Shown: piece by piece, positions 9,455 to 64,000 of the stretch
Layout of the letters: the number at the start of each line of letters is the position of its first letter
Numbering within the stretch: the stretch's first letter is position 1
Assembly (NCBI GenBank): GCA_002269645.1
Contig: NIVC01000147.1
Coordinates: forward strand, 1 to 64,000
Source: Macrostomum lignano
Taxonomy: Eukaryota
Length of the DNA: 64,000 bases
Reading direction: 5' to 3'
The notes under the pieces: generated by a model
What the model was told of the DNA's origin: nothing
The model's database searches: none
The model's input: only the letters and a program-made list of their open reading frames with translations
Translations under genes and position numbers: made by a program

Positions 9455-9842
9455 CAGCCTTGACATCTCAGCAATGCCCCCCAGTAAGCATTGACATCTC
9501 AGCGATCCCCGTGAGTCTTGATATCTCAGCAATTCCCAGTAAGCCTTGACATCTCAGGAATTCCCAGTAAGCCTTGACATCTCAGGAATTCCCAGTAAGC
9601 CTTGACATCTCAGGAATTCCCAGTAAGCCTTGACATCTCAGGAATTCCCAGTAAGCCTTGACATCTCAGGAATTCCCAGTAAGCCTTGACATCTCAGGAA
9701 TTCCCAGTAAGCCTTGGCATCTCAGGAATTCCCAGTAAGCCTTGGCATCTCAGCATTTCCCAGTAAGCCTTGACATCTCAGGAATTCCCAGTAAGCCTTG
9801 ACATCTCAGCAATCCCCCCGTGAGCCTTGACATCTCAGCAAT
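9455..9842. repeat. 28-bp minisatellite (CCAGTAAGCCTTGACATCTCAGGAATTC)
   Basis: About 13 tandem units; core motif also present near 36.3 kb and 60.3-60.8 kb. Confidence 0.9.
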
Positions 9843-22040: not shown

Positions 22041-23198
22041 TAGTGTGGGGTAGGGTGTCTATGGGGTTGACATGTCATTCTATTGAGGTAGTGTATGAGT
22101 GGTACGGCTATAGTGTAACTTATTCGGTCGCAGTTCCAATTTCTACTGCCAAACGCTGCCTGCACTCATTTATTTCGGATGCAGTTTGCTTTTCAAAAAG
22201 AACCCCAGCCACCTGGATTTTGGACACAAAGCGTCGGAGCGGCTTCGATTTTAGACTCGAAGTCTCACGCACTGAAAGCTTCGACTCAGATTTCCAACGA
22301 AAATCGGGTTGTTGAATTCTGTTTGGCACTCGAGTGTGTAACTCTGCTCTTGTTGAGCATGAGCTCAGTTTCTGCTTAGGTAGTGCCTGCCCAAAATGGC
22401 ACTGTCTAGAATGTACAAGAATATGGCACTGTCTAGAATGTACAAGAATATGGCACTGTCTAGAATGTACAAGAATATGGCACTGTCTAGAATGTACAAG
22501 AATATGGCACTGTCTAGAATGTACAAGAATATGGCACTGTCTAGAATGTACAAGAATATGGCACTGTCTAGAATGTACAAGAATATGGCACTGTCTAGAG
22601 TGTACAAGAATATGGCACTGTCTAGAATGTACAAGAATATGGCACTGTCTAGAATGTACAGGAATATGGCACTGTCTAGAATGTACAAGAATATGGCACT
22701 GTCTAGAGTGTACAAGAATATGGCACTGTCTAGAGTGTACAAGAATATGGCACTGTCTAGAATGTACAAGAATATGGCACTGTCTAGAGTGTACAAGAAT
22801 ATGGCACTGTCTAGAGTGTACAAGAATATGGCACTGTCTAGAATGTACAAGAATATGGCACTGTCTAGAGTGTACAAGAATATGGCACTGTCTAGAGTGT
22901 ACAAGAATATGGCACTGTCTAGAATATACAAGAATATGGCACTGTCTAGAATGTACAAGAATATGGCACTGTCTAGAATGTACAAGAATATGGCACTGTC
23001 TAGAATGTACAAGAATATGGCACTGTCTAGAATGTACAAGAATATGGCACTGTCTAGAATGTACAAGAATATGGCACTGTCTAGAATGTACAAGAATATA
23101 GCACTGTCTAGAATGTACAAGAATATGGCACTGTCTAGAATGTACAAGAATATGGCACTGTCTAGAATGTACAGGAATATGGCACTGTCCAGAATGTA

Positions 23199-24449: not shown

Positions 24450-26534
24450 TACAAGAATATAGCACTGTCTAGAATATACAAGAATATGGCACTGTCTAGA
24501 GTGTACAAGAATATGGCACTGTCTAGAGTGTACAAGAATATGGCACTGTCTAGAGTGTACAAGAATATGGCACTGTCTAGAATGTACAAGAATATGGCAC
24601 TGTCCAGAATGTACAAGAATATGGCACTGTCTAGAATGTACAAGAATATGGCACTGTCTAGAGTGTACAAGAATATGGCACTGTCTAGAGTGTACAAGAA
24701 TATGGCACTGTCTAGAGTGTACAAGAATATGGCACTGTCTAGAATGTACAAGAATATGGCACTGTCTAGAATGTACAAGAATATGGCACTGTCTAGAATG
24801 TACAAGAATATGGCACTGTCTAGAATGTACAGGAATATGGCACTGTCTAGAATGTACAAGAATATGGCACTGTCTAGAATGTACAAGAATATGGCACTGT
24901 CTAGAGTGTACAAGAATATGGCACTGTCTAGAATGTACAAGAATATGGCACTGTCTAGAATGTACAGGAATATGGCACTGTCTAGAATGTACAAGAATAT
25001 GGCACTGTCTAGAATGTACAAGAATATGGCACTGTCTAGAATGTACAAGAATATGGCACTGTCTAGAGTGTACAAGAATATGGCACTGTCTAGAGTGTAC
25101 AAGAATATGGCACTGTCTAGAGTGTACAAGAATATGGCACTGTCTAGAATGTACAAGAATATGGCACTGTCCAGAATGTACAAGAATATGGCACTGTCTA
25201 GAATGTACAAGAATATGGCACTGTCTAGAGTGTACAAGAATATGGCACTGTCTAGAGTGTACAAGAATATGGCACTGTCTAGAGTGTACAAGAATATGGC
25301 ACTGTCTAGAATGTACAAGAATATGGCACTGTCTAGAATGTACAAGAATATGGCACTGTCTAGAATGTACAGGAATATGGCACTGTCTAGAATGTACAAG
25401 AATATGGCACTGTCTAGAATGTACAAGAATATGGCACTGTCTAGAATGTACAAGAATATGGCACTGTCTAGAATGTACAAGAATATGGCACTGTCTAGAA
25501 TGTACAAGAATATGGCACTGTCTAGAATGTACAAGAATATGGCACTGTCTAGAATGTACAAGAATATGGCACTGTCTAGAATGTACAAGAATATTGCACT
25601 GTCTAGAATGTACAAGAATATGGCACTGTCTAGAATGTACAAGAATATGGCACTGTCTAGAATGTACAAGAATATGGCACTGTCTAGAATGTACAAGAAT
25701 ATGGCACTGTCTAGAATGTACAAGAATATGGCACTGTCCAGAATGTACAAGAATATGGCATTGTCTAGAATGTACAAGAATATTGCACTGTCCAGAGCGT
25801 ACACGAAAGGAAGCTGTCACACATTTAGAAAAGAATCATTCATTCACGGACACAAGAGATGAGCCGTGCATTCCTGGTCAATCTGTTTTTCTATTTACTT
25901 TTTCAAGACTTTGGCTATCTTAGCCTGGGATCTCCAGTTCATGGACTACCAATCTCTGCCGAATCTGTTAAGTGCGCAGACTGTTATTTCCCACCGAGAG
26001 TCGCTCGCATGCCTCCCCCCCCACAGCCCAGTTGCTGCTGCCAATTCCACGCAAAATGCTTCTAACCTTCAAGAAGTTTCTCCTGCGAACGCGGAAGAAT
26101 CCCAGTGTGCCTCGGCGCACTAATAGGTGACGCAGAAAAGATGCTGCTTTTAAGGACCGATGCTTGCGGTGTCGCTACATGGTTGGAATCCCAAGAAAAA
26201 CGGCTGCATTTGCCTGCTATTCTTGCATTACCTGTTTCAATTTAGCATTATTGATCTAACTGTTCTTCTCTTCTGCTCGTTAGGCCTGAAGCAGTTCTAG
26301 GCCAAACTGCGCACAATTGAATTCTATTTTTATAAAGCAGAAGAAACCTTTATGTCTTTTAGCTGATGATGATTTAGCTGCCCTACATTCTCTAAAAGAT
26401 TGTCCAGTGCAGGGGACGGTGTTTTAAGCAGGATCTTTGAGTGATGTCTGTCTTCTGTTCGGGTTGGTAAATAACTAAAATTTATTACAGCCAGCCTCCC
26501 TGCTATTGCGCACCACATCCTAAAGCTACTCTAT

Positions 26535-54491: not shown

Positions 54492-55379
54492 ACTTTTGGT
54501 GACAATAACACGCGCGTGGGATGCGTGTTAATGTCATTTCGGACATTAACACGCAACGGCAATTTAAACAATAACAAAGGGTAAATTTTATTTTTTATGT
54601 TAGAAAAACATCAAAAACTGTTCAACAAAGAAATCGTATGTTAATCATTTAATACCAGGCCTACACAGAAACGTCACTCAAAAAGAATATCGATCAGATT
54701 GCGACTGCCACCAATGGTCACTTTCATCTTCTTTGACGGAGCAGCCTGCACACGTAGTGCGCCGTCGGTCTGGACAGGCTCTTGATAAACGTCCGCACAT
54801 TCCTCCATCGTAGCCTCGCTTATTGTGATTGGATTTTGGACGAGCTAGCTTAACGATCTTTCACTTTCGCCCAGTGATGAGCAAGATCTCCTGGATAGTC
54901 TGGCCACAGGCATCCAGGTGGCACGCTTTTGGTGCTTTTGGTGACTTTTGGTGACAATAACACGCGCGTGGGATGCGTGTTAATGTCATTTTGGACATTA
55001 ACACGCAACGGCAATTTAAACAATAACAAAGGGTAAATTTTATTTTTTATGTTAGAAAAACATCAAAAACTGTTCAACAAAGAAATCGTATGTTAATCAT
55101 TTAATACCAGGCCTACACAGAAACGTCACTCAAAAAGAATATCGATCAGATTGCGACTGCCACCAATGGTCACTTTCATCTTCTTTGACGGAGCAGCCTG
55201 CACACGTAGTGCGCCGTCGGTCTGGACAGGCTCTTGATAAACGTCCGCACATTCCTCCATCGTAGCCTCGCTTATTGTGATTGGATTTTGGACGAGCTAG
55301 CTTAACGATCTTTCACTTTCGCCCAGTGATGAGCAAGATCTCCTGGATAGTCTGGCCACAGGCATCCAGGTGGCACGCT
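54492..55379. repeat. Near-perfect tandem duplication, 452-bp period (54492..54927 and 54944..55379)
   Basis: Copies read identical apart from CGG/TGG at GTCATTT(C/T)GGAC. Confidence 0.92.
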
Positions 55380-59790: not shown

Positions 59791-60101
59791 TATATTAGAT
59801 GGAAGGGGCGCAAAACTCGGTTCTAGTTATTTTCTAGTTTTTTGCTTCCTTTCCGCTTTCTACTGCGTTCAGTTTGGTGCATTGCACAGAGTCTAGCAGA
59901 GTTCCATTCACCATAGAGAGAAAACTGAAATCACCAGGCAATTCGTTTTTTTCGATGTTCGGGCATCAGGGTCGAAACTTCATAGCTCAGTGCTGAAGCA
60001 TACAAGAAACTGCAAATTTCTATGGGGATGGCCATTCTTTCTCCTCGTTGTTCAGTTTAGAACCGTAGACAAATTTTCATGGTCTTAATTTATAGGCTTA
60101 G

Positions 60102-61651
<1,550 letters not shown>

Positions 61652-62100: not shown

Positions 62101-63466
62101 ATGGGAAAGCCACCACGACGAGTCATAGCGACCGCCGGGTTTGCACTGCTGCTACTGCTGCTCTGTACCTGGTCTTTGAGTGACATTAAAGACAAGGCGA
62201 CAATCAACAAAAACTTTTTCAAGGACCCGGTCGATTTGGAGTCCATCGGGCACTTCGTGTACAGCGCCTACTTCGACACCAGACCGACGCTCAATGGTCG
62301 CAAGTACGTCCGCGTGATCACTGTGCTCGATACGAAGGCCTACGAGAAGGAGCTCATCTGCCAGTTCATGCACCAGTCCGGTCACCTCTCCTTCAGCACA
62401 GTCGCCAAGAGGTCTGCTATCGGCGCTGGCATGGGTCACAAGCAGCACTATTACAAGGAGTTCGTGCTGTCTTGCCCCGTCGCAGATGACCTCCGCTTTG
62501 CTGCCTTCGTCTTCATTCAAACTGGCGACGCCTCTCTGAGATCGCAGGTGATGCGAGTGAGACACAACCCTCTGTCTCTGGGTCAGAGTCCAAACAACCC
62601 TCGTCAGATCATCAACTGCGTGTCGGTGACCTTTGGCAAGCCGGATGAGTACAGACTGATCGAGTGGCTCGAGGCTCAGAGACTGCTCAAGATGGACAAA
62701 GTGCAGCTGCACTTTTATCACATGACGAACAAAAACTTTGAATCAGTAGCTCAAGCCTACAGTGCAGAAGGATTTGTGAATGTGAGAAAGCTCGGATGTC
62801 GGTTTTGTGAAGCCGGTCAGGAAGAGTGGCTGGGACTGCTGCTGATGTCTCCCGCCATCAACCAGTGCTTCTATGAGGTAATAGACACGTCATGGTGGAC
62901 AGTTTTCAGATTCGTGGCGTCACTCGTCCTTCCTTATCGAATTGCAGAACCTCGGCCGCTACACGTACACGGCGGTGTTCGACCTGGACGAGATCATCGT
63001 GCCACAGCAGCACCCGGACTATCCCACTCTGCTGAGCGCGCTGGAGAAACGAGCGAACTCGAGCTCGTTCGCCTTCAGGAACTGGTACCACTTCAGCGAG
63101 CTCGGAGAGGACTCCTCGGTGGACCCCAGGATGTACATGCTCCGGCACCCGTACAGCACGAAACAGGAGAGCCCGCCTGACTATTCTATCAAGTCGATTC
63201 ACAAATCCTGCTGTGTGGTGGCCTTGCACAACCATTTCAGCTGGGAGGACGTCCCCAAGCCAAACACGAAACGATCCCGCTACAACGCAGAAGTCCAAAT
63301 CGGCGTCAATGAGCACTACAAGCGCTGTCACTTAGATAAGGAAGCTTGCAAGGAGATGACGGATGTCAAGCATAATAAGGACGGCTTCAGACTCCGTCAG
63401 CTGTTGGGCAAGGAGCTTACGGCAGCTTTTCGCGGCAAAGTAAAGCAAATATTTGGCGCAAGTTAA
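62101..63466 (+). CDS. Glycosyltransferase family 92 / DUF23 (galt-1-like) type II membrane protein; exons 62101..62877 and 62948..63466
   Basis: N-terminal TM anchor, FVYSAYFD, EWLEAQRLL..KVQLHFY, AINQCFYE-NLGRYTYTAVFDLDEIIVP (DxD), HNHF; phase-0 GT-AG intron. Confidence 0.88.
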
Positions 63467-63955
63467 GGCTGATGCAGCGTCCTAAGCCAGCACTGTGGAA
63501 TTTAGCAATTTCAAGCGATTTATAGAGCGCATTTGCTCCTGTTCCACGTTGTGTTTGTACCGTTGCAGTGCAAGTGCATCCCTCCCTGAGTCATCCCCAT
63601 GCGTCTCGTCCCCACTTTGATGTCTGCGTGAATTACCCTGTGTGACACACCTCAATGTATGCAAGGTGTGTCTCAGCCAGTTAGCTTAAGCCCTAGTTTT
63701 CTATTTTATCGTTTAACCCTCCGTTAATTATCCCCTTGTTTGTTGTGCGATGATTGGCTGCAGCCAGGCCATCTCTTGCAGTACATTTCTGTAACTCTGC
63801 GCTGTGATTGGCTAATGGGGCTCTGAGCCAGCCTTTCCCCTTGCGTACTGTGGCTAATTTATTTTAGCGCAGCGTCGCTTGCCCCGCCTCTCGCGCGCTC
63901 GGGCTTGAGATACGTCGTATTGTTTCACTACCTAGCTGTACAGCTGGAGCTGCCA

Positions 63956-64000
63956 GCCGTAAACACGGTCCCTTACTGCGAACGCCCAACGTACTTAATA
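63956..64000 (+). ncRNA. Spliced-leader (SL)-like sequence, possible SL RNA gene variant, truncated by window end
   Basis: GCCGTAAACACGGTCCCTTACTGCGAACGCCCAAC has the flatworm SL 5' CCGT/ACGG hairpin and resembles the Macrostomum SL as I recall it; not verified against a database. Confidence 0.55.

What the first reader, a model, noticed from the sequence alone, without database searches (positions are those of the whole stretch)
63956..64000. Divergent spliced-leader-like sequence at the window end
Seen: GCCGTAAACACGGTCCCTTACTGCGAACGCCCAACGTACTTAATA, with a CCGT-AAAC-ACGG hairpin and two ATTGG (reverse CCAAT) boxes about 165-215 bp upstream. Knowledge: flatworm SL exons begin with such a CCGT/ACGG stem and end in AUG. 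From memory the Macrostomum SL is close to GCCGTAAAGACGGTCTCTTACTGCGAAGACTCAATTTATTGCATG. That matches the first 27 nt at all but 2 positions, then diverges, with ATA where the canonical leader has ATG. Inference: a second SL class, an SL-like snRNA, or an SL pseudogene about 490 bp downstream of the GT92 gene.
Basis: partly seen in the sequence, partly recalled or inferred. Interest (0 to 1): 0.75.

Follow-up and report, generated by a model that had tools for sequence, protein, structure and literature searches.

The report
Truncated spliced-leader relic in Macrostomum
The last 45 bases of the window begin with a real 27-base copy of the 5' end of the Macrostomum spliced leader, but the sequence beyond the window lacks what a spliced-leader RNA gene needs, so it is most likely a dead leader fragment rather than a second leader class.

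Summary
Identity is 34/45: 25/27 in the 5' part, then 9/18.

The window is Macrostomum lignano contig NIVC01000147.1, bases 1-64000. I recovered the next 9.5 kb, and also a canonical Macrostomum-type SL RNA gene from a metagenome contig.

Only nt 1-27 are demonstrably homologous to the leader.
- The leader-equivalent ends AUA, not AUG.
- It is followed by GUCCGU, not the GU[G/A]AG donor.
- There is no hairpin/Sm/hairpin 3' domain.
- A covariance model of the canonical gene scores it 9 bits, against 143 for the canonical gene.
- Flanks do not align.

The element is single-copy at this locus and recurs only at the same position in three duplicated copies of the locus. One of those copies is 26/27.

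Best reading: an SL-derived, 3'-truncated relic that cannot donate a leader.

One caveat remains. It lies in a CpG-rich segment downstream of CCAAT and GC boxes, and a GTAAGT donor follows 161 nt after its start. A cis-transcribed RNA with an SL-like 5' end is therefore not excluded. No expression data were reachable.

The parts
63956..63982 (+). SL-homologous core: the first 27 nt of the Macrostomum spliced leader (25/27 here, 26/27 in the contig-146 copy). It includes the CCGU-AAAC-ACGG mini-hairpin and CUUACUGCGAA.
   Evidence: blastn local alignment to the canonical gene covers exactly 63956-63982. One search gives the four copies.
63983..64000 (+). In-register tail of the leader-equivalent, ending ATA where the leader has ATG. 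It matches 9/18 and is not demonstrably homologous.
   Evidence: 9/18; 11/23 when the next 5 nt are included, empirical p about 0.018; gapped local and global alignment no better than shuffles, p = 0.74 and 0.52.
63850..64000 (+). CpG-rich, promoter-like segment. It continues to contig position 64115, outside the window. CpG o/e is 1.41 against 0.56 in the flanks. It contains a GC box, GCCCCGCC, at 63881.
   Evidence: (top 1.8% of 260-nt windows in the contig).
63753..63757 (-). Distal ATTGG (CCAAT box on the minus strand, context TGATTGGCT) at -203.
   Evidence: Motif only; not tested for function.
63807..63811 (-). Proximal ATTGG (CCAAT box on the minus strand, context TGATTGGCT) at -149.
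62101..63466 (+). Upstream neighbour: a two-exon GT92 (PF01697) glycosyltransferase gene. Exons are 62101-62877 and 62948-63466, with a phase-0 GT..AG intron. No AATAAA or ATTAAA occurs before contig position 64430, so its 3'UTR might run over the SL-like piece.

Best explanation
The element is a 3'-truncated relic of the spliced-leader RNA. It is a 27-nt copy of the leader's 5' end, starting exactly at leader nucleotide 1, joined to unrelated single-copy intergenic DNA between two convergent GT92 genes of Macrostomum lignano.

It was already there before this chromosomal segment was duplicated, because all four assembled copies of the locus carry it at the same position. It cannot act as a spliced-leader donor. 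It has no AUG-GU[G/A]AG exon end, no Sm-site domain and no canonical fold.

**Shown:** the homology and its sharp limits; the missing features; presence in four duplicated copies of the locus.

**Inferred:** the origin. Because similarity begins exactly at the RNA's 5' end and stops abruptly, I favour capture of an RNA-derived (cDNA) fragment, or breakage of a former SL RNA gene copy at nt 27/28. Present-day lack of function is also an inference.
For: **Identity of the window**
- The window is NIVC01000147.1:1-64000 of M. lignano assembly GCA_002269645.1. The overlap with L001 is identical.

**Reference gene**
- A canonical gene was recovered from a metagenome contig, L003 615-723. Its 45-nt exon is identical to the published SL. 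It is followed by GTAAG, then hairpin, AUUUUUAG, hairpin. The fold z-score is -3.3 overall and -3.7 for the 3' domain. This fits the published description of the 109-bp M. lignano gene (PMC8629364).

**Limits of the homology**
- blastn aligns only 63956-63982, at 25/27.
- Upstream local alignment gives p = 0.30.
- Downstream gives p = 0.74.
- Identity is heterogeneous: 25/2 against 9/9, Fisher p = 0.003.

**Missing features**
- The exon-equivalent ends AUA and is followed by GUCCGU. The species donor motif is GT[G/A]AG (PMC8629364).
- The 120- and 160-nt folds give z = -0.14 and -0.41.
- The 3' domain gives z = +0.37 and -0.63.
- The covariance model gives 9.1 bits, E = 3, against 142.8 bits for the canonical gene.
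- The 3' half of an SL RNA gene is found nowhere in the 73.6-kb contig or in the three other loci.

**Other support**
- The same element lies at the homologous position in contigs 146, 148 and 2621.
- SL-RNA pseudogenes lacking an AUG or a donor are documented in other flatworms (PMC12582326).
- Published k-mer surveys report a single SL in M. lignano, M. cliftonense and M. hystrix.
Against: - No retroposition hallmarks were found. The only A-rich run downstream (contig 64420-64440) belongs to the terminal inverted repeat of a MITE-like element, and no target-site duplication was seen.
- The element lies in a CpG-rich segment (o/e 1.41, top 1.8% of windows), downstream of two CCAAT boxes and a GC box. 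It is followed 161 nt after its start by GTAAGT. That is what a live promoter plus first exon would look like.
- The first 62 nt can form a hairpin about as stable as canonical stem-loop I (-15.2 against -15.6 kcal/mol). It is not significant (z = -1.1).
- GU is kept at the donor position, and the in-register tail identity is marginally above chance (p about 0.018).
- Divergence among the four copies is too low, about 2.5% in the element against about 3.5% in the flanks (my count on the alignment), to show either neutrality or constraint.
- No expression data could be consulted.
Confidence: 0.6

Rival explanations
1. Cis-encoded SL-like 5' end. The CpG-rich segment with CCAAT and GC boxes is a working RNA polymerase II promoter. 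Transcription starts at or near 63956, giving a non-coding first exon of about 161 nt. Its first 27 nt mimic the spliced leader, and it is spliced from the GTAAGT donor at contig 64117. The SL-derived piece could serve as a promoter-proximal or 5'-end module. It may have been co-opted from a broken SL RNA gene.
For: - CpG o/e is 1.41 over 63850-64115, against 0.56 in the flanks.
- ATTGG boxes lie at -203 and -149, and GCCCCGCC at -75.
- GTAAGT lies at +161 and is kept in all four copies.
- Similarity starts exactly at leader nucleotide 1.
- A comparable CpG peak marks the 5' end of the neighbouring GT92 paralog.
Against: - No downstream exon or open reading frame was found in the 2.1 kb before the convergent GT92 paralog.
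- The only ATG-initiated frame in the exon is destroyed in the contig-146 copy by ATG>ACG plus a 1-nt insertion.
- That copy also has a 7-bp deletion at -45..-39.
- The next same-strand gene, a DEG/ENaC gene at about 70060, appears to have its own CpG-island promoter, shared with the GT92 paralog.
- No gene is annotated here in any of the four loci.
- A six-ORF concatenated protein search found no predicted product from any public contig.
Confidence: 0.2
2. A functional second spliced-leader RNA class or SL-like snRNA. It would have a 45-nt non-AUG leader, a weak GUCCGU donor, a stem-loop-I-like hairpin, and an unusually long body of about 155 nt carrying an AGUUUUAAGG Sm-like site.
For: - GU lies exactly at the canonical donor position.
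- The hairpin over nt 8-53 places AUA|GU on its 3' strand, much as in canonical stem-loop I.
- AGUUUUAAGG at +121..+130 resembles the 5' part of the S. mansoni motif AGUUUUCUUUGG (PMC12582326).
- The published M. lignano gene survey accepted only 100% BLAST hits to the 35-mer, so it would have missed a variant.
- Planarians have several SL classes. I know this only from a title in a reference list, Rossi et al. 2014; that paper is not held.
Against: - There is no AUG, and the donor is non-consensus.
- The Sm-like run is not flanked by stable hairpins (z = +0.37 and -0.63) and lies well beyond the 109-nt canonical length.
- The covariance model gives 9.1 bits against 142.8.
- Whole-RNA folds are no better than shuffles.
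- The element is not multicopy or clustered; it recurs only in duplicated copies of the locus.
- Three independent k-mer analyses found one SL only.
Confidence: 0.06
3. Chance resemblance or an assembly artefact.
For: Demonstrable homology is only 27 nt long.
Against: - P(>=25/27) is 1.8e-13 per position, and 0 of 100 shuffles gave a match.
- The match starts exactly at leader nucleotide 1.
- The element is present in four separately assembled contigs that differ at other positions.
Confidence: 0.02

Closest known systems
Canonical Macrostomum SL RNA gene (109 nt; described for M. lignano in PMC8629364; an example recovered here is L003 615-723)
   Same: Nucleotides 1-27 match at 25-26 of 27. 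This includes the 5' mini-hairpin and CUUACUGCGAA, the strand that pairs with the donor GUAAG in the canonical RNA. GU sits at the same distance (+46) from the start.
   Different: - It has AUA instead of AUG, and GUCCG instead of GUAAG.
- It lacks the GAUCCA/UGGAUC hairpin, the AUUUUUAG Sm-like site and the GCCC/GGGC hairpin.
- Flanks do not align.
- It scores 9 bits against 143 bits on the covariance model.
SL-RNA pseudogenes of other animals (S. bovis, S. haematobium and F. hepatica loci lacking the donor, PMC12582326; C. elegans, Hydra and S. mansoni candidates, PMC7346339)
   Same: An SL-homologous locus that has lost the AUG and/or the donor and is not expected to be used in trans-splicing.
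   Different: Those loci are recognisable along most of the SL RNA. Here only the first 27 nt are recognisable, with an abrupt junction. It is a fragment rather than a decayed full-length copy. None has been reported for Macrostomum in the literature I could search.
Relict spliced leaders and snRNA-chimeric retrocopies (dinoflagellate relict SLs in recycled mRNAs; human U6-L1/mRNA chimeras). Recalled from my own knowledge, not checked here.
   Same: A small-RNA 5' segment lies at the 5' boundary of otherwise unrelated DNA, with homology beginning exactly at the RNA's first nucleotide.
   Different: No poly(A) tail, target-site duplication or recognisable mRNA body was found here. Dinoflagellate relics are truncated at the 5' end, whereas this one is truncated at the 3' end.
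Site-specific retrotransposons that split SL RNA genes (SLACS, CZAR and CRE in trypanosomatids; NeSL-1 in C. elegans). From my own knowledge.
   Same: They would leave a promoter plus the first part of the SL exon joined to foreign sequence.
   Different: There is no retrotransposon ORF downstream and no 3' remainder of the SL gene within 9.5 kb.

Membership tests
Functional flatworm SL RNA gene | 5' exon homologous to the species' spliced leader | tested here: inconclusive
   Met for nt 1-27 (25/27). Nt 28-45 match 9/18, and gapped alignment is no better than shuffles.
Functional flatworm SL RNA gene | Leader ends in AUG | tested here: not met
   It ends AUA in all four copies. Rare non-AUG SLs do exist in parasitic flatworms (PMC12582326).
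Functional flatworm SL RNA gene | Consensus 5' splice donor directly after the leader (GUAAG in the canonical gene; species motif GU[G/A]AG) | tested here: not met
   GUCCGU follows the leader. The consensus comes from PMC8629364. Only the GU dinucleotide and positions +5 and +6 fit.
Functional flatworm SL RNA gene | Stem-loop I with the donor on its 3' strand | tested here: inconclusive
   A hairpin over nt 8-53 is predicted at -15.2 kcal/mol, but z = -1.14 and 29 of 200 shuffles fold as well. The canonical value is -15.6 kcal/mol, z = -1.5.
Functional flatworm SL RNA gene | Sm-like site between two hairpins in the 3' domain, total length about 80-110 nt | tested here: not met
   There is no U-run within +46..+120. 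The only one is AGUUUUAAGG at +121..+130, without stable flanking hairpins (z = +0.37 and -0.63). The canonical 3' domain gives z = -3.68.
Functional flatworm SL RNA gene | Overall sequence and structure fit to the genus's SL RNA | tested here: not met
   Covariance model R1 gives 142.8 bits for the canonical gene and 9.1 bits (E = 3) for the variant. Rfam has no usable family: it misses even the canonical gene.
Functional flatworm SL RNA gene | The leader is found at 5' ends of many mRNAs; the RNA is TMG-capped and Sm-bound | not testable with these tools
   No RNA-seq access. Indirect evidence only: published k-mer surveys report one SL (PMC5173321, PMC10468722, PMC12582326).
SL-RNA pseudogene / SL-derived relic | Statistically secure homology to the SL RNA | tested here: met
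   25/27 (26/27 in contig 146), in register from nucleotide 1. P = 1.8e-13 per site, and no shuffle gave a match.
SL-RNA pseudogene / SL-derived relic | Loss of elements required for function | tested here: met
   The AUG, the consensus donor, the Sm domain and the 3' hairpins are all absent.
SL-RNA pseudogene / SL-derived relic | Neutral evolution of the element | tested here: inconclusive
   Four copies are available. There are 4 differences in 161 nt, against about 3.5% in the flanks (my count on the alignment). That is too few to separate constraint from neutrality.
SL-RNA pseudogene / SL-derived relic | Retroposition hallmarks (poly(A) tail, target-site duplication), if the fragment is RNA-derived | tested here: not met
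   The A-rich run at contig 64420-64440 is part of a MITE terminal inverted repeat. No direct repeats flank the element.
Pol II promoter plus first exon (cis-encoded SL-like 5' end) | Promoter-type motifs and a CpG island at the start; a splice donor closing the exon | tested here: met
   ATTGG x2, GCCCCGCC, CpG o/e 1.41, and GTAAGT at +161. This is sequence-level evidence only.
Pol II promoter plus first exon (cis-encoded SL-like 5' end) | Transcript evidence and downstream exons | not testable with these tools
   No annotated gene, no ORF and no predicted protein in public contigs.

The most novel reading that the evidence does not exclude
The locus is alive, in one of two forms.

(a) A polymerase II promoter, possibly descended from an SL RNA gene, makes a cis-encoded RNA. 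Its first 27 nt reproduce the spliced leader's 5' hairpin and its donor-pairing CUUACUGCGAA strand. This would be a genomically hard-wired 'SL mimic' that gives a transcript SL-like 5'-end properties without trans-splicing.

(b) A second, non-AUG SL RNA class with an atypical long body, missed because published surveys demanded exact matches to the canonical leader.
Probability: 0.15. Interest if true: 0.7.

Novelty: new member of a known kind. Interest (0 to 1): 0.3.

Why it matters
If it is a relic, it is a small but clean annotation point. M. lignano is described as having a single SL and eight identical SL RNA genes, and this is a previously unreported SL-derived fragment.

Pipelines that seed on the first part of the leader, or that trim SL from reads, could mis-assign it. 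Any transcript reading through this locus would look partly 'trans-spliced'. The sharp 27-nt boundary, starting at the RNA's first nucleotide, also hints at RNA-mediated capture of SL RNA fragments in a flatworm genome.

If the locus is instead expressed with an SL-like 5' end, it would offer a natural test. One could ask what the 5' part of the leader contributes (capping, translation, RNP binding) independently of trans-splicing.

Tried and rejected
- **Rfam** on the window, the window end and the extension found nothing. This is uninformative, because Rfam also misses the canonical Macrostomum SL RNA.
I solved this through a homology search and cluster members.
- **UniRef-only paralogs P0001 and P0004** have no contigs on record.
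- **Viral-contig scan** for the leader pattern gave 0 hits.
- **M. lignano's own canonical SL RNA loci.** I tried to reach them through the Na/K-ATPase beta gene next to the metagenome SL RNA gene. No M. lignano orthologue was found, only Logan hits at 76-77% identity. The promoter comparison therefore had to use a different species.
- **Concatenated-ORF protein search**, meant to fish out any public contig or transcript covering the element, gave no hits.
- **Search for the missing 3' half** of an SL RNA gene in 147 kb of related sequence found nothing.
- **Literature search** for the variant sequence found nothing relevant. The planarian SL3 paper, PMC3994195, is not held.
- **Rejected: retrocopy of a trans-spliced mRNA.** There is no full leader, no mRNA-like ORF, no poly(A) tail, and a consensus intron donor is present.
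- **Rejected: 5' exon of the DEG/ENaC gene.** That gene lies 6 kb away, beyond an antisense gene, and appears to have its own CpG-island promoter.
- **Rejected: coding first exon.** The ATG and the reading frame are not kept in contig 146.

Full report
**1. The observation.** The 45-mer GCCGTAAACACGGTCCCTTACTGCGAACGCCCAACGTACTTAATA is at window 63956-64000 on the + strand. Its first 27 nt occur once in the window, and no match at up to 3 mismatches appeared in 100 dinucleotide-preserving shuffles. ATTGG boxes lie at 63753 (-203) and 63807 (-149), and GCCCCGCC at 63881 (-75).

The M. cliftonense 45-nt SL is GCCGTAAAGACGGTCTCTTACTGCGAAGACTCAATTTATTGCATG (PMC10468722, suppl. Table S3). The M. lignano consensus is the same from its second base (PMC5173321), as is the 35-mer version (PMC8629364). 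Ungapped identity is 34/45, made up of 25/27 followed by 9/18, with ATA where the leader ends ATG. P(>=25/27) is 1.8e-13 per position, so the 5' match is not chance even genome-wide.

**2. Where the window comes from, and the missing sequence.**
- The gene ending 490 bp upstream has two exons (62101-62877 and 62948-63466) and encodes a GT92 (PF01697) protein.
- A homology search returned M. lignano proteins. One of them, PAA89573.1, lies on NIVC01000147.1 (73,569 bp) of assembly GCA_002269645.1.
- The fetched locus L001 is that contig, bases 56178-73569, reversed. Its overlap with the window is identical.
- The window is therefore bases 1-64000 of that contig, and the next 9.5 kb could be read.

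Directly after ...TTAATA comes GTCCGTGTAGTTCGG... The first GT[G/A]AG is GTAAGT at contig 64117, 161 nt after the start of the element.

Further on lie these features:
- a MITE-like element with 80-nt terminal inverted repeats (64449-64528 and 65286-65365);
- a convergent GT92 paralog (66178-68850, minus strand);
- a DEG/ENaC gene from about 70060.

**3. A canonical reference gene.** One scan of JGI metagenome contigs with CCGTAAASACGGTCYCTTACTGCGAA returned one contig, L003 (Ga0302322_100095745). Its features are:
- the exact 45-nt leader;
- followed by GTAAGACACC;
- the hairpin GAUCCA..UGGAUC;
- AGUAUUUUUAGC;
- the hairpin GCCC..GGGC.

This matches the verbal description of the 109-bp M. lignano SL RNA gene: donor GTAAG, and an Sm-like site between hairpins 2 and 3 (PMC8629364). 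It folds far better than shuffles, with z = -3.3 overall and z = -3.7 for the 3' domain.

The contig's Na/K-ATPase beta protein is only 76-77% identical to its nearest relatives, with no M. lignano hit. The organism is therefore another Macrostomum-like flatworm. The leader is invariant across M. lignano, M. cliftonense, M. hystrix and this organism.

**4. Comparison of the variant with the canonical gene.**
- blastn aligns only 63956-63982.
- Upstream 350 nt: best local score 21 against 19.6 +/- 2.6 for dinucleotide shuffles, p = 0.30.
- Downstream of nt 27: p = 0.74 local and 0.52 global.
- The in-register identity of the tail plus the first five 'intron' bases is 11/23, empirical p about 0.018 in this window. 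This is a hint, not proof.
- The identity drop from 25/27 to 9/18 is significant (Fisher p = 0.003). The element is therefore not a uniformly decayed full-length copy. Either only about 27 nt are SL-derived, or the 5' part has been preferentially kept.

**5. Tests of SL RNA function.**
- The exon-equivalent ends AUA.
- The donor position reads GUCCGU, against the species motif GT[G/A]AG.
- RNA folds of 120 and 160 nt are no better than shuffles, z = -0.14 and -0.41.
- The first 62 nt can form a hairpin (nt 8-53) that puts AUA|GU on its 3' strand. It is about as stable as canonical stem-loop I (-15.2 against -15.6 kcal/mol), but it is not significant (z = -1.1).
- The only U-run is AGUUUUAAGG at +121..+130. 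The surrounding 81 nt fold no better than random in either sequence version (z = +0.37 and -0.63).
- A covariance model built from the canonical gene scores that gene 142.8 bits and the variant 9.1 bits, E = 3.
- The missing 3' half of an SL RNA gene was not found anywhere in the contig or in the related loci.
- Rfam gave nothing, but it also fails on the canonical gene, so that result carries no weight.

**6. Copies.** Members of the GT92 protein cluster led to three further Mlig_3_7 loci, on contigs 146, 148 and 2621. These align to the region at 94.9%, 98.5% and 97.8% identity. Each carries the element at the homologous position.

Contigs 148 and 2621 are identical to the window over the element and its 161-nt continuation. 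Contig 146 differs as follows:
- it has GGTCTC, so it matches the leader at 26/27;
- it has a 7-bp deletion at -45..-39;
- it has ATG>ACG at the only ATG of the 161-nt stretch;
- it has a 1-nt insertion.

The element therefore predates the duplication of this segment and is not an assembly artefact. The stretch is not coding. Divergence is about 2.5% in the element and about 3.5% in the flanks (my count on the alignment), which does not discriminate constraint from neutrality. The 954-bp spacer is otherwise single-copy in all the sequence I hold.

**7. Context that keeps a rival alive.**
- Contig 63850-64115 is CpG-rich: o/e 1.41 with 24 CpGs, against 0.56 in the flanks. That is in the top 1.8% of 260-nt windows in the contig.
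- A similar CpG peak marks the 5' end of the neighbouring GT92 paralog.
- With two CCAAT boxes, a GC box and a GTAAGT donor at +161, this resembles a TATA-less polymerase II promoter plus a non-coding first exon.

Against that reading:
- no downstream exon or ORF was found;
- no gene is annotated here in any of the four loci;
- no predicted protein from any public contig matches six concatenated ORFs of the region.

There is also no AATAAA or ATTAAA between the GT92 stop codon and 64430. The piece may therefore simply ride in a long GT92 3'UTR.

**8. Verdict.**
- The resemblance to the leader is true homology, but it is limited to leader nt 1-27.
- The locus fails the defining features of a working SL RNA gene that could be tested: the AUG, a consensus donor, the Sm domain and the overall model fit.
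- I favour a 3'-truncated SL-derived relic, confidence about 0.6. Flatworm SL-RNA pseudogenes have precedent (PMC12582326), but this is an unusually short, sharply bounded fragment that has not been reported for Macrostomum.
- A cis-transcribed RNA with an SL-like 5' end (about 0.2) and a genuine second SL class (about 0.06) remain open. Mapping existing M. lignano RNA-seq and 5'-end data to this 500-bp region would settle the matter.

Noticed in passing
window 1-64000 (whole window): The window is bases 1-64000 of Macrostomum lignano contig NIVC01000147.1 (assembly GCA_002269645.1). It is very rich in minisatellites: 56 TRF rows, for example 27-bp arrays at 22396-23198 and 24450-25807, and a 452-bp tandem duplication at 54492-55379.
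   Followed up: partly
window 9456-9842: A 28-bp minisatellite of about 14 copies. On the minus strand its unit contains CTTACTGGGAA, one mismatch from the SL core CTTACTGCGAA. No further SL similarity, so this is taken as coincidence.
   Followed up: partly
window 60100-61650: A large palindrome about 0.5 kb upstream of the GT92 gene. (ATAG)n at 60772-61055 and (ATCT)n at 61073-61262 are flanked by inverted, near-identical arms: ORFs 60234-60431 (+) and 61330-61515 (-) translate to the same peptide.
   Followed up: no
L001 8205-8284 and 9042-9121 (contig 65286-65365 and 64449-64528, just past the window): A MITE-like insertion of about 0.9 kb with 80-nt terminal inverted repeats (88% complementary) and AT-rich outer ends. 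It supplies the only AATAAA downstream of the GT92 gene.
   Followed up: partly
L001 4720-7392 (+) = contig 66178-68850 (-); L004 10001-12132 and 20759-21527: GT92 genes form a convergent pair around the SL-like piece. Contig 146 has an extra tandem copy. The locus exists in at least four diverged copies in the assembly (94.9-98.5% identity), in line with the reported hidden polyploidy (PMC10468722).
   Followed up: partly
L001 3031-3510 (-) = contig from about 70060 (+); L005 4888-8756: A DEG/ENaC (PF00858) channel gene lies divergent from the GT92 paralog, with a CpG-rich peak (contig 68801-69061) between them and a CTACAG acceptor about 40 nt before its ATG.
   Followed up: no
L003 1-3076 (JGI metagenome contig Ga0302322_100095745): An environmental metagenome contig carries a canonical Macrostomum-type SL RNA gene (615-723), with a 9-nt partial repeat GCCGTAAAC at -15. 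That repeat has the same C as the variant's loop. About 1.1 kb downstream is a Na/K-ATPase beta-subunit gene (1774-2922, PF00287). The organism is not M. lignano.
   Followed up: partly
L001 277-924 (contig about 72650-73290): A 21-22-bp tandem array (GGATGGGTTGGTGTCAGCTGGA-like) lies near the end of the contig.
   Followed up: no
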